From positions 1 through 64,000 of the forward strand of contig NW_026860755.1 of the NCBI RefSeq assembly GCF_026571515.1: DNA of 64,000 bases. Direction: 5' to 3'. The notes beneath the pieces were generated by a model. It saw only the letters and a program-made list of their open reading frames with translations, searched no databases and was not told where the DNA came from. The stretch's first letter is position 1. Each line of letters starts with the position of its first letter. The position numbers and the translations under genes were made by a program. The stretch is from Ruditapes philippinarum. Lineage: Eukaryota. This document shows positions 7,204 through 59,227 of this stretch, one piece after another.

Positions 7204-7482
7204 ACGCATTTTTCTACTTGTGGTCCATATGCCGCTTTTCATGGAATGGCACTAACGTGTCACATTGAAAGTTCCATGATAACCGCCATATGAACACATC
7301 TGTGGATGTTTCGAAATTCTTAATTATACCAGTTTAATGTTAAATGTTGCATTATGCTTAAGCCGGTGCTAGGGGACGTGGACGGTAGTTTGCACTTGAC
7401 AGTACCGTCCATGAACAGGCTCAATCAAACCGAGCCTGCAACATTTTTCAGTTTTGCCGTGTTGGGCTTTCCTTAGGGATTC
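7204..7482 (+). ncRNA. Unassigned structured RNA-like element, subfamily A, copy A1
   Basis: Closing helix aaatgttg(7342)/caacattt, hairpin gtggacggta/taccgtccat with a TTGCACTT loop, hairpin caggctc-AATCAAACC-gagcctg, and 5' stems catatg/catatg, tcatggaa/ttccatga and tggcac/gtgtca. Homologous end to end to 58950-59227 (-). G-U wobbles favour this strand. Confidence 0.7.
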
Positions 7483-10392: not shown

Positions 10393-11369
10393 AAAATTCT
10401 GGAAACAAAGTGATCCCTCTGAAGCATTAATCACAACAAAATAACATAAGAATTGCAGACTCGGTTTGATTGAGTCTGTACATGAGGGATAATGGATAAG
10501 TGCAACATCCCTCACACCCCCTAGCACCGGCTTGAGCGGTACTCAATTCTCAACACTTTATAGTGTTGGCATCAATGATCCCGAAGGACCAGAAAATATA
10601 ACAACACTGAAGTGAAGTACGGGGCAACTTTTTACGGCTGCCACACAGCACTTGACACCTGCTGTTGTGAAGTACAAAATTCTGGAAACAAAGTGATCCC
10701 TCGGAAGCATTAATTACAACAAAATAACATAAGAATTGCAGACTCGGTTTGATTGAGTCTGTACATGAGGGATAATGGATAAGTGCAACATCCCTCACGC
10801 CCCCTAGCACCGGCTTGAGCGGTACTCAATTCTCAACACTTTATAGTGTTGGCATCAATGATCCCGAATGACCAGAAAATATAACAACACTGAAGTGAAG
10901 TACGGGGCAACTTTTTACGGCTGCCACACAGCACTTGACACCTGCTGTTGTGAAGTACAAAATTCTGGAAACAAAGTGATCCCTCGGAAGCATTAATCAC
11001 AACAAAATAACATAAGAATTGCAGACTCGGTTTGATTAAGTCTGTACATAAGGGATAATAAAAAAGTGCTGCATCTCTCACGACCCCTAGCATTGGCTTG
11101 AGCGGTACTGAATTCTGAACACTTGAAAGTGCTGGACTCAGATCCCGAAGGACCAGAAAAATATAATAACATTAGAGTGAAGTACGGGCAACAACTTTTT
11201 ACGGCTGCCACACAGCACTTGACACCTGCTGTTGTGAAGTACAAAATTCTGGAAACAAAGTGATCCCTCGGAAGCATTAATCACAACAAAATAACATAAG
11301 AATTGCAGACTCGGTTTGATTGAGTCTGTACATGAGGGATAATGGATAAGAGCAACATCCCTCACGCCC
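10393..11369 (-). ncRNA. Head-to-tail array (3 full units of 283-284 bp plus a partial unit) of the structured RNA-like element, subfamily B
   Basis: Unit boundaries at 10393, 10676, 10959 and 11243. The minus strand of each full unit has a long hairpin (ggcagc/gttgcc), gtcc-TTCG-ggat (cUUCGg; one substitution in the 10676 unit), a caacact/agtgttg-type hairpin, closing helix agaattg/caattct, gtgagggat/atccctcat with a TTGCACTT loop, and cagactc-AATCAAACC-gagtctg. The 10959 unit is a variant. Confidence 0.75.
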
Positions 11370-13310: not shown

Positions 13311-13470
13311 TCGGAAACAATGAAATACAACAATATAGTATGGACATTACAGACTCGGTTTGATTACATCTGTTCATAACAGATACTGAATAAGTGCAAC
13401 ATCTCTCACGTCCACTAGCGCTCGCTTCGCGTGGTCTAACGGTTCACACTTTCCACGTAGTTAAATCAAA
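13311..13470 (-). ncRNA. Divergent single copy of the structured RNA-like element (B-like)
   Basis: Minus strand: gcgaagcgagcgctagtggacgtgagagatgttgcacttattcagtatctgttatgaacagatgtaatcaaaccgagtctgtaatg. It keeps TTGCACTT and AATCAAACCGAGTCTG. Confidence 0.65.
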
Positions 13471-19521: not shown

Positions 19522-19990
19522 ACTTTCCTTCAGTGTTGTTATGTTTTCCTTGTCCTTCAGGATCATTGATTTAAGCACTTTTAAGTATTGGAAATTGAGT
19601 ACCACTCAAGCCGGTGTTAAAGGGCGTGTGGATTGTTGCACATTTTCATTATCCTGCAAACTCAAGTCTGCAATTTTCATGTAATTTTGTCGTGATAAAT
19701 GCTTCCGAGGTATTTCACTTTTTTCAAATTTTTTAACTTCACAACAGAAGGTGTCAAGTGCTGTGTGGCAGCTGTAAAATATTGCCCCGTACTTCACTTT
19801 AGTGTTGTTATATTTTTCTGGTCCTTCGGGATCAATGATTCCAGCACTTATAAGTGTTAAAAGCAGGTACCGTTAAAGCCAGGGGCGTGAGGGATGTTGC
19901 ATATTTTCATCATCCCTCATTTACAGACTCAATCAAACCGAGTCTTCACTTTTCACGTAATTTAATTCTTCCGAAAATCACTTATTTTCT
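19522..19990 (+). ncRNA. Two diverged head-to-tail B-type units (19522-19735, 5'-truncated; 19736-~19990)
   Basis: Contains acttcacaacagaaggtgtcaagtgctgtgtggcagc, ggtccttcgggatc, gtgagggat...atccctcat and cagactcaatcaaaccgagtc. The unit junction matches the 10.4-11.4 kb array, in the opposite orientation. Confidence 0.7.
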
Positions 19991-29034: not shown

Positions 29035-29910
29035 AATAAGAGGGCCATGATGGCCCTGTATCGCATCCCTGACCCATCAATCGCATCCATTCTTAGACAA
29101 GCATCCTGGCCAAGTTTGATGACAATGGAGTCAACATGTGACCTCTAGAGTGTTAAAAATGTTTTCCATATTTTGGCAATGTGACCTAATTTTTGATTGG
29201 AGAAGACCCATATTCAAACTTGACCTAGAAATCATCAAAACAACCTTTCTGACAAATTTCCAGGATATTTAAAGATTTTTCTATTTTTAGCTCCTGTCAA
29301 CTAGTTTTTGACCAGAAATGACCCATCTTCGAACTTGACCTAGAAATCATCAAAACAATTTTCCTGACAAATTTCCAGAATATTTTGATCAAAACTGCAG
29401 CCACTAGAGTGTTAACAAGCTTTTTATTTATTTCTAGCTCCTGTGACCTAGTTTTTGACCGGAAATGACCCATCTTCGAACAAGACCTAGAAATCATCAA
29501 AAACAACCTTCCTGACAAATTTCCAGAATATTTGGATCAAAACTGCAGCAACTAGAGTGTTAACAAGCTTTTTTAATTTTTAGCTCCTGTGACCTAGTTT
29601 TTGACCGGAGATGATTCATCTTCGAACTTGACCTAGAAATCATCAAAACAACCTTCCTGACAAATTTCCAGAATATTTGTATCAAAACTGCAGCCACTAG
29701 AGTGTTAACAAGCTTATTCTATTTTTAGCTCTTGTGACCTAGTTTTTGACCAAATATGACCCATCTTCGAACTTGATCTAGAAATCATCAAAACAATCTT
29801 CCTGACAAATTTCCAGAATATTTGAATCAAAACTGCAGGCAGTAGAGTGTTAACAAGCTTTTTCTAATTTAGATCCGGTGACCTAGTTTTTGACCGTAGA
29901 TTACCCATCT
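29035..29910 (+). repeat. HINE/pearl-like element with ~146 bp internal satellite monomers (~5-6 copies)
   Basis: Head aataagagggccatgatggccct (hairpin). The monomer gtgacctagtttttgacc...gaacttgacctagaaatcatcaaaacaa...ctagagtgttaacaag repeats at ~29181, 29296, 29443, 29589, 29734 and 29878. Confidence 0.8.
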
Positions 29911-35888: not shown

Positions 35889-36975
35889 AACTAGGAATGT
35901 GTCCATAGGACACGGGTCTCCCCTTCGCGCCACTGTTCTGTCAATCTTATGACTCTAGGTCAAATATTTTTTGAAAACTAAAAATCTTTTACTAAGTAAA
36001 GGGCAAGAACTTTACAAATACTGAATAAATTCACAAGTAAATCCCAAGGTGCATAAGTACGTATGCTGACCAACATTCTTTTAAACATTCAGGCCTACAA
36101 ATGAAATACTTTCTGAGCTATGCATGAACAAGTTGAAAATTGTAAATTATTCGATAAATTAAAGTGAACCTGTAGTAGCCACTCCTATATTGTCTTTCTT
36201 ATTTATATTTTATCCCTGTAGGATATTAATAATGGAGTTAAATGATAAATCATTTATGTTTGGCTGAATGAAATGAAAGAAAACATAAATACTTTTTGAG
36301 CTATGCATGAACAAGATGAAAATTGTTAATTTATACTACTGTAAGTCAAGGGCAATAACTCTAACAAAACTGAAAAAATCCACATGAAAGTCCCAGGTTC
36401 ATAGCTTCACAGTGATGTAAATCATTATTCCTGTAATTTAGTGATGTTGATCATTATTCCTGTAAAGTTGGTTGATTCTCACTCAAGCACTCAAGGAACA
36501 AATAACAACATAATGAAACGTTTTTTACTAAGTCAAGGGAAATAACTCTACAATGCTGGATAAATCCACAAGCCAAACCCCCAGGTGCAAAACTAAATAT
36601 GCTGAGCAACCTTCCCGTAAGGTTTAATGACTCTATGTCAAATCCTTTTTGAGTTACATGTGACACAAGTTGAAAACTGCAAAATTTTACCAAGTCAAGG
36701 ACAATAACTCTAAAAATCCTAAATAATTCCAGACGAAAATACCCAGATGCGCAACTACACATGCTGATCAACATTCCTGTAAAGTTTCATTACTCTAAGT
36801 CAAATACTTTTTGAGTTACATGCGACACAAGTTGAAAATTGCAAAATTTTACTATGTCAAGGGCCATAACTTTCCAAATATTAAATCCAGACGAAAATAC
36901 CCACGTGCACAACTACACATAATGTTCAACATTCCTGTAAAGTTTCATTGCTCTAGGTCAAATCCTTCTTGAGTA
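35889..36975 (+). repeat. HINE/pearl-like element with degenerate ~150-160 bp tandem monomers
   Basis: Head aactaggaatgtgtccataggacac (hairpin), then repeated aagtcaagggcaataactct...caactacacat...attcctgtaaagttt. Confidence 0.65.
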
Positions 36976-38104
36976 ACTACAATTCATGGACTAGTAACAA
37001 CTAGATCTCCGCGAGTCGGATGAGTTTAGTAGAAATGGCCAAGACAAAAATGAAATATGAAAATTAACAAAGGGCAATAAAGTTAAAGCCACTAATAGCA
37101 AATAACAAGCAAAGCCAAAATTTAGACATTGAACCTTGAAGGTCAAGGTCAATTATGAATGAAGGCCAAGGTTAGACAATACACCAAGAACTTTTAAAGT
37201 TATGAACTAGGTTCAAGTTTGCAGAAGGCAACGGCAGCAACATCTATTTCTTTTTTCAAAAAACAAAGAAAAGCTGAGCTAAAGTGAATGACATAGTACA
37301 TGTATATGAAAAGATATAATTGAATAATACTTTTAACTTCGTTACTACATTAAAGCTCATAGCATCACTTATAGTTTAATAGATTGGATAATATTTTGCA
37401 CTTGTAAAAAAAGTAGTAATTTTTCTGACAAAATATTAAAAACAGACCTTGAGTCATGACAAATGAATCAAGAGAATTTTTTGGAAACAAGATAGATACA
37501 GTGCCATATGTAAAAAGATATTTCATAAAAAAATCATGAATACCAGGTGTTCAATGTCAGCTTAAATATGTTTGAATAGTTGGGCAATCAGTGTAACACA
37601 CTAGTTATCATTCTTTTCCATAAAAAGTCAATCATATCTTGATTTATGTTCCCATGAATGGCTCGGGTAGGCTTCGGGCTAACTTGGGCCAAATATTTTG
37701 AAAGTCTGTGGGTGTCATCTTCCTCTAACTTTCTATTTTATATATCCCCTCCATGTCACTAATTCTCAGAGTTATAGCATCATGAAAAATGGTATAATGA
37801 TACTTTTTATTCTTCTTTAATTCATCCAGACTTGCTGACGTCTGAAATGAGAAATTAACAAGCCTGTTATAACAAAAATCATAAGTGTATACAATTCTCA
37901 AAATGCATTACATGTAATTATGTCCTCAAAATTTATTAGTCAGGTCAGGTCAGAGACTGCAAAATCTCTTTTGATTGAAATTAATATTACATAGGCAATA
38001 TAAATGCATAGTTATCACACTTTCAATAAATGTCTCTTATAATTCATAGAGGCAGGAACATTTAATACTAAGATATGCAGCATTTATATTCATATGCAAA
38101 AATG

Positions 38105-41100
38105 AAAAAAACTAGAAATGTGTCATCATGCAACGGATGCCCCCGCATGCAGCCAAAATTTCAGATGTTATAATATTTAGTTCCAAATTTGTTTGCACAA
38201 ATAATTTTTTTCATTTTTAGTTCAAAGCCCTTAAAACTTTTCAATGTTAACACAAACCATTTCCATACAATGTTCAAGGCACTGAAATTATTCAGTCTTA
38301 ACCTTTTGAAAATAGCATATTTCATATTTGTAGCCAAAATAGTGGCTACATACATTTCCACAAAAGTTATGGGTTCTTGAAACTGAAAGTTCAAATTTTT
38401 GCCAACATTCAAGAAAGATAAGTTTGTCCAAAATCATTGAACCATGACCAAATTCAAACTTAAACTGCTTATTCCTAAGATGTATCTATATTATTTTCAA
38501 AGTGAAAGGGACATAACTCTGCAAAAAAAAAATCATCGAACCATGACCAAATTCCAACTTGACCTGCCCATTCCATATCCATATGTCAAGTTTGAGTTAA
38601 ATATGTAACACTGTTGGGTAGATATGAACAGAAACTGTTAATTTCATATTATTTTCAAAGTCTGTCAAAAAATAATTGAACCATGACCAAATTCAAACTT
38701 GGCCTGGGCATTCCAAAAAACATATCCATATGTCAAATTTGAGTTGAATGTGTTGTACCGGTGGGGAAATAATACACAGAAACTTGATAAAATTTCATAT
38801 CATTTTTCAAAGTGAAAGGGGCATAACTCTGCCAAAAGTCATTGAAACCATGACCAAATTTGAAACTTGACCCTGCGCATTCCTTTGACATTTATCCATA
38901 TTGTCAAGTTGTGATGTTGAATGTGTTGTAACCGTTGGAGTGAAGATAAATTTAACGGAACACTGAAAATTTCATAATTATTTTCAAATTGAAAGGGGCA
39001 TAACTCTGCCAAAATGAGAATCAATACTCATTAAATCCAGCATATATAAAATCCAAATTCGACTACTTTACATTTGATGCACCTGTTATTCTAATCTTGC
39101 AAGTGGAACAATTATATCACAGCTGTGTAAATCTTTTATCAAAGATAATTATTACATTAGCAGAGTACTAATATTCAAAGTCATTTTTTTGGAAGTTATG
39201 TTATTGTAAAGGATGTTCCTTAATTAAAGTGATCATTATTTAATATTTTGATAACATGTATTTCGTTTTGCAGTCTAGATTGAGTATTCATATTTTTAAT
39301 AGAAACGGGCAGTACAGCTAGGCAATGTTAGGACTGAAGAGATATTTCATTTACTATCATGTCATCCAATATAGTATTAATGGGCAATTAAACTCTGTCT
39401 TATCAACTACCCCAAAAATAGACATTTTGCTTACATCCAACCAATCCAAACCTGCTCATATATATCAGTAAGCGTTGACCTGTATTTTATTTATGACAGT
39501 CACAATCTTCCACTTGTAATGGCCTCATTAGGATTTATAAGATACATGCAATGACATATGGTTCCCTTATTAATGTGTCACCAACAGTACAAAGCGTGTG
39601 GGGAATAATATCTGAACGTCGGTAAAATCATGGGTAAATAATTGCACTTAATCTTTTTACAAAAAGAACCTAGGGGCCCACATATCATTAGTTAAAATGT
39701 TATCCACTCTAGATTCCATTAAAAATACAATTGAACGATGACACATAGAAAAGAATTTAACCAAAGCAATGTTTTTTCCCGTTATTCCATTATATCAAAA
39801 TTTGATAAGATAATGAATGAATGGAAACGAATTTGATGATGACGGAATGACAGAATGACGGAAGGACGGAAACAGGGTAACACTATATGCCCTGGCCATT
39901 ACATGGCGGGGCATAAAAATGTTGAGAATCTGTATGCCCATAGAAAATAATGCACAACATTTTATTTAGGTTTTGCCTCTTTATATGTTTGAAGAACTGA
40001 AATCTTTTCTATTGAAATAAACAAAGAAACATGCTACATCCATATTAGACTCAGTACAGAGTACATCTATGTTGAACATTATTAAAGTTCCAAACAATTC
40101 ACTTTATTAACACAAACTGGACACTGTTTTCTTTCATTCTGTAAAATTGTGAAACATTACATGACTACATGTTGGAGTTTTGTAAGTAGCATACTTAACA
40201 GATCCCCCTTGTTGGTGATGTATGGTCAATTTGCATGTATATTATAATCTATGGCTGCAAGAAGATTGTGCATCCTATAAACAGGTGGTGTGTAAGCAAA
40301 TCTTTTGGTACAATACATCAAAATGTGCTGTTGAAACCCCTACATGCCAGCTGTACTTTTAAAAATGAATACAAAGAATGAAAAGATATTTTCATTTTAA
40401 ATGATTTTTAGTAAGGAAAACATCCTTTTACATTAACATATTCATATGCTTGATATAATCTCTGTATGTAAATAATTATCTTTGAAAAGATTTTACACAG
40501 CTCTATCCTTCAATTGATAAGTGCAATAAAGGTGGCCAATTAATTTATACATAATGGTTGTAGCGTCCATTTGCGTTAACATATAAAGGTGCTGTAAACA
40601 TTAAACATTCTATAATCAATAGACATATTGAGCTTTGTATTAATCAGGACATATACTCCTTTCCAGTTACGAAAATAAATCCTTTTTTTAAAAATTTCAC
40701 TCAAAACTGCTAGCATATCTTAACAAAGATAGACAATATCTCTTTGCAGAATTAATGGTTCCAACATTGGAGCCATTGGCTTCAACTTTTTGATTGGGCC
40801 AATCTGGTGGTGCAAACTAAAATTGCCCCAGGGGGAACCCTGTCAATAAAAAATTTCTTTTATTGTACCTGATGAGAACATACCTGCAGTTGAGATATTA
40901 TGTCATCTTATTCAGAACACCAGCCAGATCTTTCAGACTATGTGCATCTTATTTCCTTTGCAGCCATGGTTTGTTCTGGTTTCTAATGGGCCATGATTGT
41001 ACTAGGCATTGGTGTATTCCATCATCTGAAAACAGAATCCATTCATGCTCAATAACTATAAGATTGATGCAGACACTAAAATATATTATTCCCTGAAATA

Positions 41101-41215
41101 AAATATCAAGACAAATAAGCATGCATTAAAAATGGCAAAGAAGTCAGCCTTCAACAAGTTTTATGAAACATAACTAAGCATTTCACATTTATTTTACATA
41201 TAAAATGCTTACCAT
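38105..41215 (+). repeat. First copy of a ~2.7-3.1 kb direct duplication (partner 47844-50528)
   Basis: Near identical to 47844-50528 except for many 1-nt homopolymer indels and ~820 bp of unrelated sequence at ~39017-39833 that replaces about three satellite monomers. Confidence 0.9.
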
Positions 41216-41804
41216 TGTAATAGATGACCAAATTTACTTTATATAAGTACTATACTTCTATTTAATTCTGATTTCTTAATTTCCATTATGCTAGTACTGA
41301 TACTTTACAATCAGTTTTGAAACACTATACGATCACTTTTGAAACACTATACGATCACTTTTCTTGTTTAAAGTTAGGCAATATTATTACGCTGCTAAAC
41401 AATAAGTATTTGGAATCATTTGGCACTTTTGCCAACTTAAATTTATCCCATTCTGTATGTTAATTGCTATTAACAAGTGTCCTGTTAATTAACATGTTTA
41501 TGACGTCACTTTATGACGTCAAACTTGAACGAACACTTGGACGTGAAGGTTTGACGTCATAAAAGACCAGAAGCGCTCTGACCACCATTGCGGTAAGCCG
41601 TTGTTTTCATTTCTCGGAAGTTTTCCGATTTTCTTTTATTTCCCCTACCTTATTTATTTTATATGTATGTTAATTATGAAATATGATGACTTAAATATTT
41701 AATACAATTCATAAAACTTACATTTGCCTTTATTCTCATTTCTTTTGTTTAATTTACACAAACGGTCCTGTGATATCGAACCGAAAGACTGTTCCCCGTT
41801 TACA
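41216..41804 (+). mobile_element. 5' LTR (589 bp) of a Ty3/Gypsy retrotransposon
   Basis: TGTAA...TTACA termini, preceded by CCAT and followed by a PBS. About 5 substitutions versus 50529-51117. Contains three TGACGTCA (CRE) sites. Confidence 0.9.
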
Positions 41805-47498: not shown

Positions 47499-47843
47499 AT
47501 GTCACGTGCGGGATTTTATAAAGACGAACCCTGTGAGGTCAAAGGATGCAACTTTAAGCAAAGGTGAATAAGAAGTTACAAGCGCCACTATGAGGAGAGG
47601 CATAGGCCGACATGCTCGCAGTTTAAGTGTAACTTATGTGTTGAGAGTTCCCCTCAGTTTCTGAGAAGGGATAGTTTCGTCAAACATCTCAGGGGAGTTC
47701 ATTTTCTTTCTGGTTATGCCCTTTCTTATCATCTGTCACTTAATAAACCTTCAAAATTATTTAATCCATTGTATATTCCTCCTGGAGATGTTCTTCCTCC
47801 TTCTCTTGGAGCTGGTCTCCAGCCATTCTTATATGTTAATATA
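47499..47843 (+). pseudogene. Accessory ORF with two C2H2 zinc fingers downstream of pol (one in-frame TGA)
   Basis: Manual translation: MSRAGFYKDEPCEVKGCNFKQR*IRSYKRHYEERHRPTCSQFKCNLCVESSPQFLRRDSFVKHLRGVHFLSGYALSYHLSLNKPSKLFNPLYIPPGDVLPP. Preceded by a T-tract and TAG acceptor ending at 47495. Confidence 0.7.
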
Positions 47844-47848
47844 AAAAA

Positions 47849-49244
47849 AACTAGAAGTGTGTCATCATGCAACGGATGCCCCCGCATGCAGCCAAAATTT
47901 CAGATGTTATAATATTTAGTTCCAAATTTGTTTGCACAAATAATTTTTTTCATTTTTAGTTCAAAGCCCTTAAAACTTTTCAATGTTAACACAAACCATT
48001 TCCATACAATGTTCAAGGCACTGAAATTATTCAGTCTTAACCTTTTGAAAATAGCATATTTCATATTTGTAGCCAAAATAGTGGCTACATACATTTCCAC
48101 AAAAGTATGGGTTCTGAAACTGAAAGTTCAAAATTTTTCCAACATTCAAGAAAGATAAGTTTGTCCAAAATCATTGAACCATGACCAAATTCAAACTTAA
48201 ACTGCTTATTCCTAAGATGTATCTATATTATTTTCAAATTGAAAGGGACATAACTCTGCAAAAAAAATCATCGAACCATGACCAAATTCCAACTTGACCT
48301 GCCCATTCCATATCCATATGTCAAGTTTGAGTTAAATATGTAACACTGTTGGGTAGATATGAACAGAAACTGTTAATTTCATATTATTTTCAAAGTCTGC
48401 CAAAAATAATTGAACCATGACCAAATTCAAACTTGGCCTGGGCATTCCAAAAACATATCCATATGTCAAATTTGAGTTGAATGTGTTGTACCGGTGGGGA
48501 AATAATACACAGAAACTGAAAATTTCATATCATTTTCAAAGTGAAAGGGGCATAACTCTGCCAAAAGTCATTGAACCATGACCAAATTTGAACTTGACCT
48601 GCGCATTCCTTTGACATATCCATATGTCAAGTTTGAGTTGAATGTGTTGTACCGTTGGGGAGATAAAGAACGGAAACTGAAAATTTCATATTATTTTCAA
48701 ATTGAAAGGGGCATAACTCTGCCAAAAATCATCTAACCATAACCAAGTTCTTACTTGACCTGTATTTTCTCATGACATATCCATATGTCAAGTTTGAGTT
48801 GAATGTGTTATACTGTTGGGGAGATAATGAACGGAAACTGAAAATTTCATATTATTTTCAAAGTATAAGGGGCATAACTCTGCCAAAAATCATCCAACCA
48901 TAACCAAATTCTAACTTGACCTGTATTTTATTATGACATATCCATATGTCAAGTTTGGGTTTAATGTGTTGTACCGTTGGGGAGATAATGAACGGAAACT
49001 GAAAATTTCATATTATTTTAAAGTAAAAGGGGCATAACTCTGCCAAAAATCATTGAACCATGACCAAATTCAAACTTGACCTGTATTTTTTCATGACATA
49101 TCCATATATCAAATTTGAGTTGAATGTGTGCAACCGTTACTAAGATAATGAATGGAAACTGATGATGACGGAATGACAGAATGACGGAAGGACGGAACAG
49201 GGTAACACTATATGCCCTGGCCATTACATGGCGGGGGCATAAAA
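47849..49244 (+). mobile_element. Complete HINE/pearl-like non-autonomous element
   Basis: Head aactagaagtgtgtc, ~155-160 bp tandem monomers (ggggcataactctgccaaaaatcat...ccatatgtcaagtttgagttg), a gacggaat-type microsatellite, and a 3' hairpin atgccc...gggcat followed by an A run. Confidence 0.8.
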
Positions 49245-50195
49245 ATGTTGAGAATCTATATGCCCATAGAAAATAAAGCACAACATTTTATTTAGGTTTT
49301 GCCTCTTTATATGTTTGAAGAACTGAAATCTTTCTATTGAAATAAACAAAGAAACATGCTACATCCATATTAGACTCAGTACAGAGTACATCTATGTTGA
49401 ACATTATTATAGTTCCAAACAATTCACTTTATTAACACAAACTGGACACTGTTTTCTTTCATTCTGTAAAATTGTGAAACATTACATGACTACATGTTGG
49501 AGTTTTGTAAGTAGCATACCTAACAGATCCCCCTTGTTGGTGATGTATGGTCAATTTGCATGTATATTATAATCTATGGCTGCAAGATGTGCATCCTATA
49601 AACAGGTGGTGTGTAAGCAAATCTTTTGGTACAATACATCAAAATGTGCTGTTGAAACCCCTACATGCCAGCTGTACTTCTAAAAATGAATACAAAGAAT
49701 GAAAAGATATTTTCATTTAAATGATTTTAGTAAGGAAACATCCTTTTACATTAACATATTCATATGCTTGATATAATCTCTGCATGTAAATAATTATCTT
49801 TGAAAAGATTGTACACAGCTCTATCCTTCAATTGATAAGTGCAATAAAGGTGCCAATTAATTTATACATAATGGTTGTAGGTCCATTTGCGTTAACATAT
49901 AAAGGTGCTGTAAACATTAAACATTCTATAATCAATAGACATATGAGCTTTGTATTAATCAGGACATATACTCCTTTCCAGTTACGAAAATAAATCCTTT
50001 TAAAAATTTCACTCAAAACTGCTAGCATATCTTAACAAAGATAGACAATATCTCCTTTGCAGAATTAATGGTTCCAACATTGGAGCCATTGGCTTCAACT
50101 TTTTTGATTGGCCAATCTGGTGGTGCAAACTAAAATTGCCCCAGGGGGAACCCTGTCAATATAAATTTCTTTTATTGTACCTGATGAGAACATAC

Positions 50196-50337
50196 CTGCA
50201 GTTGAGATATTATGTCATCTTATTCAGAACACCAGCCAGATCTTTCAGACTATGTGCATCTTATTTCCTTTGCAGCCATGGTTTGTTCTGGTTTCTAATG
50301 GGCCATGATTGTACTAGGCATTGGTGTATTCCATCAT
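50196..50337 (-). other. Putative exon 3 of a minus-strand spliced transcript (duplicated near 40885-41026)
   Basis: Acceptor ttttcag and donor cag|gtatgt. Continues the exon 2 frame to ...PWLQRK*. Confidence 0.45.
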
Positions 50338-50528
50338 CTGAAAACAGAATCCATTCATGCCCAATAACTATAAGATTGATGCAGACACTAAAATATATTA
50401 TTCCCTGAAATAAAATATCAAGACAAATAAGCATGCATTAAAAAATGGCAAAGAAGTCAGCCTTCAACAAGTTTTATGAAACATAACTAAGCATTTCACA
50501 TTTATTTTACATATAAAATGCTTACCAT

Positions 50529-51117
50529 TGTAATAGATGACCAAATTTACTTTATATAAGTACTATACTTCTATTTAATTCTGATTTCTTAATTTCCATT
50601 ATGCTAGTACTGATACTTTACAATCAGATTTGAAACACTATACGATAACTTTTGAAACACTATACGATCACTTTTCTTGTTTAAAGTTAGGCAATATTAT
50701 TACGCTGCTAAACAATAAGTATTTGGAATCATTTGGCACTTTTGCCAACTTAAATTTATCCCATTCTGTATGTTAATTGCTATTAACAAGTGTCCTGTTA
50801 ATTAACATGTTTATGACGTTACTTTATGACGTCAAACTTGAACGAACACCTGGACGTGAAGGTTTGACGTCATAAAAGACCAGAAGCGCTCTGACCACCA
50901 TTGCGGTAAGCCGTTGTTTTCATTTCTCGGAAGTTTTCCGATTTTCTTTTATTTCCCCTACCTTATTTATTTTATATATATGTTAATTATGAAATATGAT
51001 GACTTAAATATTTAATACAATTCATAAAACTTACATTTGCCTTTATTCTCATTTCTTTTGTTTAATTTACACAAACGGTCCTGTGATATCGAACCGAAAG
51101 ACTGTTCCCCGTTTACA
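50529..51117 (+). mobile_element. Second LTR copy flanked on both sides by CCAT (solo-LTR configuration)
   Basis: CCAT at 50525-50528 and 51118-51121. TGTAA...TTACA termini. No polypurine tract upstream and no PBS downstream. Confidence 0.9.
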
Positions 51118-53985: not shown

Positions 53986-55611
53986 CGGTATGCCTAAAAT
54001 ACGAAAGTGAGATTTTTGACGAAAGTGAGCGAAAGTGAGCGAAAATGACTTTTAAAATAGTAATTATAACATTTTAATAAACTTTTTAAACAAACTTGCA
54101 GTTTGTAGACGTATATTATTAGAAAATAATTATATTTATTAACAGAAATAATCATTATGATGATTTAATCGCTACTAATTTGCATAATTTCTATACACAA
54201 GTTCTTATATCTTCCTTTCGCTCACATTACAAATTCACACATAATCACATTGATTAGAAGTGCAGTGCAAAGAACAGTAACTCTGCCTTGCCTAATTTTG
54301 GACTTTAAACTTTTTCCAGGGACATAACTCTAAAACTTCATGAGGTGTACTTTCCTGTGTCCAAAACCTATTCGGGGAGCATCACCCGGCTCAAACCGGG
54401 CTCTTGTTTAATATATTTTATTCATTTCTGAAAACATGCGTCTTTCAGCGCTATATTTGACATTTTTGAAGTCACTTTCGTATTTTTCAATGTGAGGGAA
54501 AGGAAGATCTTTTAACTTGTGTAATGCAAATAAAGGGTGGTTAAATCATCATTATGATTATTTTTAAAAAATAAATATAATTGACTTCTGATATTGTACA
54601 TCTACAAATTAATTGCAATTTTAGTAATAAATTCAATTTAAACAGTATATTTGATATTTTGTAAGCCACTTTCGTATTTTTCAATGCAAGCGAAAGAAAG
54701 ATCTCTGTATATAACTTGTGTATAGAGATTATGCAAAATAAATGGCGATTTAATCATCATAATGTAAATATTATCATTTTCTGATATTATACGTCCACTT
54801 TGTGCAATATTAGTAAAAATAATTTCAATTTAAACAGTATATTTTATAAGTCACTTTCGTATTTTTAGATGAAAACCAAAGGAAGATATAACAATTTGTG
54901 TATATAAATTATGCAAATAAAAACCGAATAAATCATCATTATGATTATTTTTTATAATAAATATAAGTAATTTCTAATAATATACGTCTACAAACTGCAA
55001 TTTTATGCAAATAAAGGGCGGTTAAATCATCATAATGATTATTTTTAAAAATAAATATAATTGACTTCTGATATTGTACATCTACAAAGTAATTGCAATT
55101 TTAGTAATAAATTCAATTTTAACAGTATATTTGATATTTTGTAAGCCACTTTCGTATTTTTCAATGCGAGCGAAATGAAGATCTCTGTATATAACTTGTG
55201 TATAGAGATTATGCAAAATAAATGGCAATTAAATCATAATAATGATCATCTTTGAAAGTAAATATTATCATTTTCTGATATTATACATCCACTTTGTGCA
55301 ATATGAGTAAAAATAATTTCAATTTAAACGGTATATTTTATATTTTATAAGTCACTTTCGTATTTTTCAATGTAAGCGAAAGGAAGATATAAAAATTTGT
55401 GTATATAAATTATGCAAATAAAAACCGAATAAATCATCATTATGATTATTTTTTATAATAAATATAAGTAATTTCTAATAATATACGTCTACAAACTGCA
55501 ATTTTATTGTAAAAGTCTATAAAAAGGTTACAATTAATATTTTAAAAGTCACTTTCGCTCACTTTCGCTCACTTTCGTCAAAAATCTCACTTTCGTATTT
55601 TAGGCAAACCC
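53986..55611. mobile_element. Non-autonomous foldback element with long TIRs and a 9-bp TSD (Mutator/MULE-like)
   Basis: TSD attgtccgc at 53977-53985 and 55612-55620. TIRs of at least 75 bp contain repeated cgaaagtga. Internal AT-rich subterminal tandem repeats start with cactttcgtattttt. Confidence 0.85.
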
Positions 55612-58650: not shown

Positions 58651-58949
58651 ATGATTGTTAATAATAATCAATCAGGATAAATCTGCTACAATGGAATTAC
58701 ATGTATTTGAAATAATGATTTTAATAAAGTTTAATTCTTTTATTTAGAAAATATACGGTGATCATACATAAAGAAAATGAATCCAATGTAGACATACAAA
58801 CCTGATACAAGCGTTCAGAAATGTCGTTTCTCTACAGTCACTGGCATTAGTGAATGATTTATCTAACACATTTAAGATAAAACATAGTAAATAACAATGT
58901 GCAGTTAAAACATTCACAATGGTCAAACGTTTTAAGATAGATAAATACA

Positions 58950-59227
58950 GAATCCCTAAAGAAAGTCCAATACGACAAAACTGTAAATGTTGCAGGCTCG
59001 GTTTGATTGAGCCTGTTCATGGACGGTAATGGAAAGTGCAAGTTACCGTCCACGCCCCCTAGCACCGGCTTAAGCAGAATTCAACATTTAAACATGAAAT
59101 AGTAAAATTTCGAATTTAGAAACATCGGCAGATGTGTTCATACGGCGGTTATCATGGAACCTTCAATGTGACACTTCCGTGCCATTCCATGAAAAGCGGC
59201 GTATGGTCCCCAAGTAATAAAAAGCGT
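58950..59227 (-). ncRNA. Unassigned structured RNA-like element, subfamily A, copy A2
   Basis: End-to-end homologue of 7204-7482 with differences concentrated in loops and linkers. Has a compensatory catacg/cgtatg stem and a GGAA tetraloop on tggcac/gtgtca. Confidence 0.72.

What the first reader, a model, noticed from the sequence alone, without database searches (positions are those of the whole stretch)
10393..11369. Spacer-less head-to-tail arrays of the structured unit: concatemer, circular RNA or retrozyme-like behaviour?
Seen: 283-284 bp units abut directly, and the same junction (...aattttgt|acttcacaac vs ...aattttttta|acttcacaac) occurs in the diverged, oppositely oriented array at 19522-19990. 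Both arrays end near the same 3' point of the unit but start at different internal positions. Established: metazoan non-LTR retrozymes are tandem copies of a few hundred nt that carry a self-cleaving ribozyme and yield circular RNAs. Inference: there is no room for a promoter per unit, so monomers would need processing from a multimer, by self-cleavage or by a nuclease. No hammerhead CUGANGA/GAAA core is present, so any ribozyme would be of another or a new class.
Basis: partly seen in the sequence, partly recalled or inferred. Interest (0 to 1): 0.8.

Follow-up and report, generated by a model that had tools for sequence, protein, structure and literature searches.

The report
Hammerhead-less head-to-tail retroposon arrays
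The 283-base head-to-tail block is one insertion of a very abundant, young, non-coding mobile element of a clam-like genome; it is copied from a structured RNA and lands as strings with one fixed and one ragged end, like Penelope-type elements and retrozymes, but no self-cutting RNA or RNA circle could be shown.

Summary
Observation confirmed. Window 10393-11369 holds 3.45 spacer-less 283-nt units. The old inverted array at 19522-19990 has the same junction, and both arrays share one fixed end.

In a census of the loci fetched from across the genome, 59 of 73 arrays end at unit position 279-283 of the minus-sense strand. Their other ends are scattered over the unit. That is the retroposition signature of a fixed 3' end and a ragged 5' end, not unequal crossing-over.

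A related 630-nt family (B) behaves the same way and shares two hairpins with compensatory changes. A, B and Naiad-type Penelope pieces are joined sense-to-sense, always at the 3' terminus of the upstream partner.

Best reading: a non-autonomous element mobilised Penelope-style, with strings formed by template switching at integration.

Ribozyme search: no hammerhead core and no Rfam ribozyme, even at lenient thresholds. A twister-like look of the conserved core fails on covariation and on the cleavage-site nucleotides.

The scan reached the same reading earlier on other DNA of this genome (s1-803765, s1-792543, s1-803830).

Verdict: a new variant of a known kind, of moderate interest.

The parts
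10393..11369 (-). Array 1 of family A: 3.45 head-to-tail units of 283 nt. RNA sense is taken as the window minus strand. The fixed 3' end lies at 10393 and the 5' truncation at 11369 (unit position 157).
   Evidence: TRF, sequence, unit alignment, boundary census
10676..10958 (-). Reference unit, about 99% identical to dozens of copies on other contigs. The minus-sense RNA folds at -97.6 kcal/mol (z -5.3), against -71.5 kcal/mol (z -2.0) for the plus strand.
10959..11242 (-). Mosaic unit. Its two ends are identical to the young consensus, while its middle (about + positions 80-235) is about 14% diverged and has no close relative in the genome (best 87%).
10765..10798 (-). Hairpin H2 (GUGAGGGAU...AUCCCUCAU) with the conserved loop UUGCACUU. 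Four of its base pairs are changed on both sides in family B.
   Evidence: alignment A2 and pair counts
10739..10761 (-). Hairpin H1 (CAGACUC...GAGUCUG), with one compensatory pair in family B. Its loop (unit position 211) is a recurrent insertion target for further copies.
10794..10908 (-). Twister-like look-alike: GCCCC-GU ... ACCG-CUCAAGC-CGGU-GCUAG-GGGGC-GU-GAG. It is conserved in sequence between families A and B but is not supported as a twister.
   Evidence: descriptor scan, pair counts, no Rfam match
19522..19990 (+). Array 2: an old, diverged (75-83%) 1.7-unit copy of the same superfamily in opposite orientation. It has the same junction, a 5' truncation at unit position about 58 and a 3' end near 19990.
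13320..13427 (-). Old fragment of the same superfamily (H2 and H1 region, 77% to the unit).
7204..7482 (+). 5'-truncated fragment of the related 630-nt family B. RNA sense is on the window + strand.
58940..59227 (-). Second 5'-truncated fragment of family B, inverted relative to the first.

Best explanation
The array is one integration product of a non-coding, non-autonomous retroelement (family A, 283 nt). The same genome holds a 630-nt sister family, B. Shown: the template strand corresponds to the window minus strand, and its 3' end is fixed at ...CCAGAAUUUU(G). Inferred: reverse transcription is primed at the target on the terminal U-tract. The enzyme copies toward the 5' end and, at or before the end of a unit, switches to the 3' end of another copy of the same or a related RNA. 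Each insertion therefore becomes a head-to-tail string with a fixed 3' end and a randomly truncated 5' end. This is the insertion style of Penelope-like elements. The hammerhead-less Naiad clade, abundant in this genome, is the most likely source of the enzyme. The conserved hairpins H1 and H2 and the invariant GUAAAAAG loop are most likely recognition or promoter signals for that machinery, not a ribozyme.
For: Boundaries. In 30 loci taken by best match, nearly every array starts exactly at AAAATTCTGG (+ orientation) beside unrelated DNA and stops at scattered unit positions. The same holds in older copies fetched with a different query. The census gives 59 of 73 arrays ending at unit 279-283, 5' starts spread over the unit, a median of 1.8 units and a maximum of 6. 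The fixed end varies by 0-2 nt (AAAATT, AAATT, AATT), as expected for priming inside a U-run.

Junctions. There are 116 A|A and 32 B|B junctions in identical register. Non-canonical junctions in which the left partner ends at its own 3' terminus number 33 sense-to-sense against 13 in opposite sense (p 0.0045). For A and B alone the counts are 20 against 5 (p 0.004). At C12074 an A string sits exactly between the 3' end and the 5' end of two B units.

Link to Naiads. Naiad-type Penelope fragments lie within 1.5 kb of arrays in five loci. Four have an ORF followed by a near-threshold SECIS hit (L002, L012, L017, L069); L058 has the ORF only. Naiad pieces also join A and B at 3' termini. A, B and Naiad all end in A-U4-5. 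A 3' ends (three cases) and a Naiad 3' end (one case) land in the same H1-loop site with T-run overlap.

Published behaviour. Naiads are reported to show 5' truncation, partial tandems, adjacent inverted copies, no hammerhead, tens of thousands of copies in bivalves and selenoprotein forms in clams (PMC8557442).

Structure. H2 has four pairs and H1 one pair changed on both sides between A and B, with 94.5% of cells paired against 31-40% in slid controls.
Against: No reverse transcriptase has been tied to the element. A and B show no sequence homology to the tail of the one Naiad family examined. For junctions that involve Naiad, the sense bias is not significant (13 against 8). No consistent target-site duplications were found. 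The strand of the RNA is inferred, not observed: both strands of B fold well (z -5.4 and -4.5). No RNA reads could be laid. Mosaic patches cross unit borders (C8036), and some arrays share private variants in all their units (6 shared against 16 unit-specific). Multimeric or circular templates, or later recombination, therefore cannot be excluded.
Confidence: 0.68

Rival explanations
1. A true retrozyme-like cycle with an unrecognised ribozyme. Multimeric transcripts of arrays would self-cleave at the unit junction (...UUUUG|UACUUC...) or elsewhere. The monomers would be ligated into about 283-nt circles, which would then be copied by rolling-circle reverse transcription.
For: The junction is precise in 116 cases. 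The RNA is highly self-paired (z -5.3). Five of 54 arrays start within 5 nt of the unit border beside foreign DNA (p 0.003), which suggests unit-length RNAs whose two ends map to one site. Some arrays share private variants in all units. Two blocks are conserved between A and B, including a twister-like arrangement that is rare by chance (about 2.5 hits per shuffled 64-kb window on both strands). Fourteen transcriptome-sized run assemblies from 8 coded studies hold 54-69% of the unit's words.
Against: No Rfam ribozyme family matches at E up to 10 on the array, or at E up to 1 on loci with A and B. CTGANGA is absent. The twister-like pseudoknot strand lies inside the covarying hairpin H2 and loses its C-G pair in B. 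P4 shows no compensatory change. The obligatory N|A-A is not adjacent to P2. The would-be twister cut (unit position about 42-49) does not coincide with the array junction. No HDV-like P1 is possible at the 5' end, because the complement of GUACUUC is absent on that strand. Units within one array can differ by 10% or be mosaics, which a single circle cannot give.
Confidence: 0.13
2. A SINE-like element mobilised by a LINE (not a Penelope-like element), with strings made afterwards by local tandem duplication.
For: The fixed 3' end and 5' truncation are also the LINE/SINE signature. LINE reverse-transcriptase fragments occur in some flanks (L043, L062). The long array on C3482 shows a higher-order repeat pattern that indicates later local duplication.
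Against: Most insertions, including the youngest ones at about 99% identity, are already strings with a partial first unit. Heterologous A-B strings joined at 3' termini cannot come from local duplication. There is no tRNA-like part. Internal T4-5 runs on both strands argue against polymerase III transcription. Tandem plus inverted composites are typical of Penelope-like elements (PMC8557442).
Confidence: 0.1
3. A DNA-level origin: ordinary satellite DNA spread by unequal crossing-over, or repeats carried by Helitron/Helentron-type rolling-circle transposons, as described for bivalve satellites.
For: Bivalve genomes carry many short dispersed arrays, and the window holds other arrays of 145-206 nt. 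The array on C3482 shows local higher-order repeats.
Against: Flanks are unrelated on both sides, so there are no shared left or right arms and no TC...CTRR ends. One end is fixed to the nucleotide while the other is ragged. Chimeric sense-to-sense joins with other retroelements occur at 3' termini.
Confidence: 0.05

Closest known systems
Metazoan non-LTR retrozymes (Cervera and de la Pena 2020, PMC7229834; bioRxiv 10.64898/2026.07.22.740005)
   Same: Both are short (170-400 nt), non-coding, AT-rich, highly self-paired units in dispersed head-to-tail strings. Both are thought to be mobilised in trans by Penelope-like elements, and both occur in bivalves.
   Different: Every retrozyme unit carries a type I hammerhead, and circular RNAs have been shown for them. 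Here there is no hammerhead or any other known ribozyme, and circles are untested.
Naiad-clade Penelope-like elements (Craig et al. 2021, PMC8557442)
   Same: Shared features are 5' truncation, partial tandems, adjacent inverted copies, absence of a hammerhead, a U-rich 3' terminus and very high copy number in a clam genome. Naiad pieces are physically joined to A and B strings.
   Different: Naiads are 3.4-4.4 kb and encode an endonuclease plus reverse transcriptase. The unit here is 283 nt and non-coding, with no detectable homology to the one Naiad tail examined.
Twister self-cleaving ribozyme (Rfam RF03160, RF03154, RF02684; PMC5408937, PMC11662667)
   Same: The order of elements is the same: P2 5' strand, 2-nt pseudoknot strand, long insert, P4 with an NNN-AAGC loop, P2 3' strand, G, N, then 3 nt complementary to the loop.
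   Different: There is no N|A-A before P2, no P1 and no covariance-model match. Three or four of the roughly ten near-invariant nucleotides differ. The pseudoknot is not kept in family B and competes with a covarying hairpin.
SINEs and other LINE-dependent retroposons
   Same: Both are non-coding, have a fixed 3' end and a ragged 5' end, and occur in thousands of young copies.
   Different: SINEs insert as single units and usually carry a polymerase III promoter. This element inserts as strings and as chimeras, and has no tRNA-like or polymerase III features.

Membership tests
Non-LTR retrozyme | Dispersed short head-to-tail repeats of about 170-400 nt, non-coding | tested here: met
   Period 283, 3.45 units; thousands of candidates genome-wide; flanking ORFs belong to other elements, and open frames within the arrays were not searched for families
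Non-LTR retrozyme | Type I hammerhead ribozyme in each unit | tested here: not met
   No Rfam hammerhead match at E up to 10; none at gathering score in the window; CTGANGA absent from both arrays on both strands
Non-LTR retrozyme | Expressed as unit-length circular RNA | not testable with these tools
Run assemblies guessed to be RNA hold 54-69% of the words, which shows neither circles nor strand.
Non-LTR retrozyme | Highly self-paired RNA | tested here: met
   Minus strand -97.6 kcal/mol, z -5.3, 0 of 200 shuffles as good
Penelope-like (Naiad-style) insertion architecture | Fixed 3' end with frequent 5' truncation | tested here: met
   59 of 73 arrays end at unit 279-283; 5' starts are spread over the unit
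Penelope-like (Naiad-style) insertion architecture | Partial tandems made at insertion, including chimeras joined at 3' termini | tested here: met
   116 canonical A|A joins; 33 sense-to-sense joins at a 3' terminus against 13 in opposite sense
Penelope-like (Naiad-style) insertion architecture | Adjacent inverted copies | tested here: met
   Recurrent inverted joins at unit 211 in L005, L014, L015 and L017. At least two are nested antisense insertions into the H1 loop.
Penelope-like (Naiad-style) insertion architecture | Bias for (TA)n-type microsatellite targets and a 30-40-nt tail | tested here: inconclusive
   The window copy abuts an AT-rich 7-nt microsatellite, which was not analysed further because of the filter. 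Other 3' flanks show no common repeat. Short partial first units (12-38 nt) are no more frequent than expected.
Penelope-like (Naiad-style) insertion architecture | Own reverse transcriptase plus GIY-YIG endonuclease ORF | tested here: not met
   The unit is non-coding, so it can only be a non-autonomous passenger
Twister ribozyme | P2 and P4 helices with the L4 loop NNN-AAGC | tested here: inconclusive
   Candidates are present and rare by chance, but P4 is paired in only 77% of cells and shows no compensatory change
Twister ribozyme | Three-pair pseudoknot between L4 and the 3' strand of L1 | tested here: not met
   CUC/GAG is possible in A. In B the C-G pair is lost, and the strand lies inside hairpin H2, which covaries at four pairs.
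Twister ribozyme | Cleavage-site N|A followed by A directly before P2, and a covariance-model match | tested here: not met
   The sequence before P2 is GUAAAAAGUU. No twister model matches at E up to 10.
SINE (polymerase III retroposon) | tRNA-, 5S- or 7SL-derived head with an internal promoter, and no internal terminators | tested here: not met
   ARAGORN finds nothing; no Rfam match; T4-5 runs lie inside the unit on both strands
Helitron/Helentron-borne satellite | Conserved arms on both sides of the repeat core | tested here: not met
   Flanks are unrelated between loci

The most novel reading that the evidence does not exclude
The two blocks conserved between the 283-nt and 630-nt families form a self-cleaving ribozyme. 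It would be either of a new class or a strongly divergent twister relative. It would cut multimeric transcripts into unit-length RNAs that circularise. These elements would then be the first hammerhead-less retrozymes and the missing ribozyme partner of the hammerhead-less Naiad Penelope-like elements.
Probability: 0.1. Interest if true: 0.85.

Novelty: new variant of a known kind. Interest (0 to 1): 0.45.

Why it matters
Retrozymes are defined by their hammerhead. Naiad Penelope-like elements are noted for lacking one and yet being the most prolific retroelements of bivalves.

A very young, non-coding element with thousands of copies that forms strings in the same manner without any known ribozyme shows one thing clearly: string formation and trans-mobilisation do not need a hammerhead.

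It also gives a compact 283-nt substrate, with two covarying hairpins and a defined U-rich 3' end, for working out how Penelope-type reverse transcriptases pick and switch templates. If the conserved core did turn out to cleave, it would be a new ribozyme context.

Tried and rejected
Ribozyme and RNA-family searches.
- Rfam at gathering score on the whole window gave nothing.
- Lenient scans of the array, of 16 loci with families A and B, and of a Naiad tail gave only chance microRNA-like matches to inverted copies, plus near-threshold SECIS hits belonging to Naiads.
- Genome-wide searches with the Rfam hammerhead and twister-P5 models were uninformative. Too few candidates were scored and the controls did not ring.
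- tRNA-like processing signals: none found.

Manual checks.
- The hammerhead core is absent.
- An HDV-like P1 at the unit's 5' end is impossible on the sense strand (sequence inspection).
- The hairpin-ribozyme loop A arrangement does not fit.
- The twister-like reading was rejected on covariation.

Other tests.
- Editing as the cause of the diverged third unit: the substitution spectrum is mixed, so this was rejected.
- Homology of A or B to a Naiad 3' region by blastn, nhmmer and k-mer matching: none above shuffled controls.
- Pfam on flanking ORFs gave only LINE reverse-transcriptase fragments; the Naiad C-terminal ORF has no Pfam match.
- Literature search for unit sequence strings: no paper.
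- Private-variant sharing within arrays was too sparse to separate circle, multimer and template-jump models.

Read laying. They were present only passively in locus files read by local scripts, and I excluded the window's own contig from the flank tabulations.

Full report
**What is there**

Window 10393-11369 holds 3.45 copies of a 283-nt unit with no spacer: TRF gives period 283, 93% matches and 0% indels (sequence). Units 1, 2 and 4 differ by about 1%. Unit 3 (10959-11242) is a mosaic. Its ends equal the young consensus, while its middle is about 14% diverged, has a mixed substitution spectrum and has no close relative elsewhere.

A second array at 19522-19990 is old and 75-83% identical. 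It lies in the opposite orientation and carries the homologous junction. A further fragment lies at 13320-13427.

**Genome-wide behaviour**

The genome (1.4 Gb, 15,874 contigs) gives 1908 first-look candidates for the unit, and dozens of scored hits are 99% identical. The diverged array gives 7028 candidates.

In 30 loci chosen only by best match, nearly every array begins exactly at AAAATTCTGG (+ orientation) next to unrelated DNA and stops at scattered unit positions. Older copies fetched with a different query show the same pattern.

A census over all fetched loci gives the following:
- 73 arrays, of which 59 end at unit position 279-283 of the minus-sense strand.
- The remaining 14 are mostly interrupted by other insertions or belong to a recurrent inverted join.
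- 5' starts are spread over the whole unit.
- The median length is 1.8 units and the maximum is 6.

The fixed end varies by 0-2 nt within the terminal run. Junctions inside arrays are precise: 57 read ATTTTGT (young subfamily) and 33 read TTTTTAT (older subfamily) between the anchors, and there are 116 canonical joins in all.

The boundaries are not those of unequal crossing-over. They are the fixed-3'-end, ragged-5'-end signature of target-primed reverse transcription.

**A sister family and conserved structure**

Many loci also contain a 630-nt tandem family (B). B shares only two blocks with A, at about 80% identity, and has its own fixed end. Fragments of B lie in the window at 7204-7482 and 58940-59227.

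On an alignment of A and B copies:
- Hairpin H2 keeps nine pairs, four of them changed on both sides.
- H1 has one pair changed on both sides.
- 94.5% of cells pair, against 31-40% when the partners are slid.

The A unit folds much better as the minus strand (z -5.3) than as the plus strand (z -2.0). B folds well on both strands (z -5.4 and -4.5). The strand assignment therefore rests mainly on the 3'/5' asymmetry and on the joins described next.

**Chimeric joins**

I annotated all loci with A, B and a Naiad-type Penelope element and listed the adjacent segments. Thirty-three non-canonical joins are sense-to-sense with the upstream partner ending at its own 3' terminus. Thirteen comparable joins are in opposite sense (p 0.0045). 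For A and B alone the counts are 20 against 5 (p 0.004).

At C12074 an A string lies exactly between the 3' end of one B unit and the 5' end of the next. Five of 54 arrays start within 5 nt of the unit border beside foreign DNA (p 0.003).

These facts fit a reverse transcriptase that leaves one template and resumes at the 3' end of another. They also suggest that at least some templates have a real 5' end at the unit border.

Two observations complicate this. Mosaic patches cross unit borders (C8036), and some private variants are shared by all units of an array. Multimeric or circular templates, or later recombination, are therefore not excluded.

**Who moves it**

Five loci hold a Naiad-type ORF fragment within 1.5 kb of the arrays. 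In four of them (L002, L012, L017, L069) the ORF is followed by a near-threshold SECIS hit; L058 has the ORF only.

This matches the selenoprotein Naiad Penelope-like elements reported for clams. That paper also reports frequent 5' truncation, partial tandems, adjacent inverted copies, short tails, (TA)n target bias, lack of a hammerhead and very high copy numbers in bivalves (PMC8557442).

Further points that link the unit to Naiads:
- A, B and this Naiad all end in A followed by four or five U.
- The 3' ends of A (three cases) and of a Naiad (one case) have landed, antisense and with T-run overlap, in the same loop of hairpin H1 of older A copies.
- The window copy abuts an AT-rich microsatellite.

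The link is circumstantial. A and B have no detectable homology to this Naiad's tail, and joins involving Naiad are not significantly sense-biased (13 against 8).

**Is there a ribozyme?**

No Rfam family reaches its gathering score in the window. None matches at E up to 10 on the array, at E up to 1 on 16 loci with A and B, or at E up to 10 on a Naiad tail.

I noticed that the most conserved stretch resembles a twister core in the order of its elements: GCCCC-GU ... ACCG-CUCAAGC-CGGU-GCUAG-GGGGC-GU-GAG. Notes of this scan claim twister-like motifs in Naiad tails. A loose descriptor finds this arrangement in the units and only about 2.5 times per shuffled window.

The reading fails the defining tests:
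- The N|A-A before P2 is missing.
- There is no P1 and no model match.
- P4 shows no compensatory change.
- The pseudoknot strand lies inside the covarying hairpin H2 and loses a pair in B.
- The would-be cut site (unit position 42-49) is not the array junction.

An HDV-like or hatchet-like fold at the 5' end is not supported either. I therefore put a functional ribozyme at about one in ten.

**RNA evidence**

Fourteen transcriptome-sized run assemblies from 8 coded studies hold 54-69% of the unit's words. Raw RNA runs of the same species exist. Strand, ends and circles therefore remain untested.

**Comparison and verdict**

The element works like a non-LTR retrozyme, or like a non-autonomous passenger of Penelope-like elements. 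It is not a member of the retrozyme family as defined, because the hammerhead was tested and is absent.

It is a new variant of a known kind. The same conclusion was reached earlier in this scan on other DNA of this genome (s1-803765 for the 283-nt family; s1-792543 and s1-803830 for the 630-nt family). I re-derived it independently here and added four things:
- the junction census;
- the insertion hot spot in the H1 loop;
- the A/B covariation counts;
- the negative test of the twister reading.

Noticed in passing
L002:375-436(-), L012:675-736(-), L017:2876-2937(+), L069:512-573(+): Near-threshold SECIS_1 matches (28-34 bits; gathering score 35) lie just downstream of a conserved ORF end (...YDKRDDFDFCIVNYPHLDG...). 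The ORF has no Pfam match. This looks like the selenoprotein Naiad Penelope-like element reported for clams.
   Followed up: partly
L005, L014, L015, L017 (unit position 211; homologous to about window 10748 in unit 2): The loop of hairpin H1 (CAATC|AAACC) is a recurrent antisense insertion site for new A copies and for a 46-nt Naiad 3' piece. The inserted element's T-run overlaps the target's TTT. This may point to a structure- or sequence-specific endonuclease target.
   Followed up: partly
window 38092-41427 and 47831-50740: A segmental duplication about 9.3 kb apart (95-99% identical blocks) carries 161-177-nt tandem arrays (38668-39014, 48396-49162) and small 8- and 22-nt repeats.
   Followed up: no
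window 53987-55610: 247-nt inverted repeats (89% complementary) enclose 94- and 206-nt tandem repeats (54909-55494). This is a MITE-like or foldback structure.
   Followed up: no
window 29272-29910 and 36523-36974: Two further short tandem arrays (145-nt x 4.4 copies; 162-nt x 2.8 copies), unrelated in sequence to the 283-nt unit.
   Followed up: no
G000:C3482:96110-101482 (L057, L058): A long array of the older subfamily (at least 12 units within the fetched loci, with further hits to 101482) has alternating junction variants. This higher-order repeat pattern indicates later local duplication on top of retroposition. A 5'-truncated Naiad copy interrupts it at unit position 206.
   Followed up: partly
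L019:282-387: A family B copy carries the reverse complement of the Naiad 3' end inserted in the loop of its H2 hairpin.
   Followed up: no
It was left alone afterwards.
   Followed up: no
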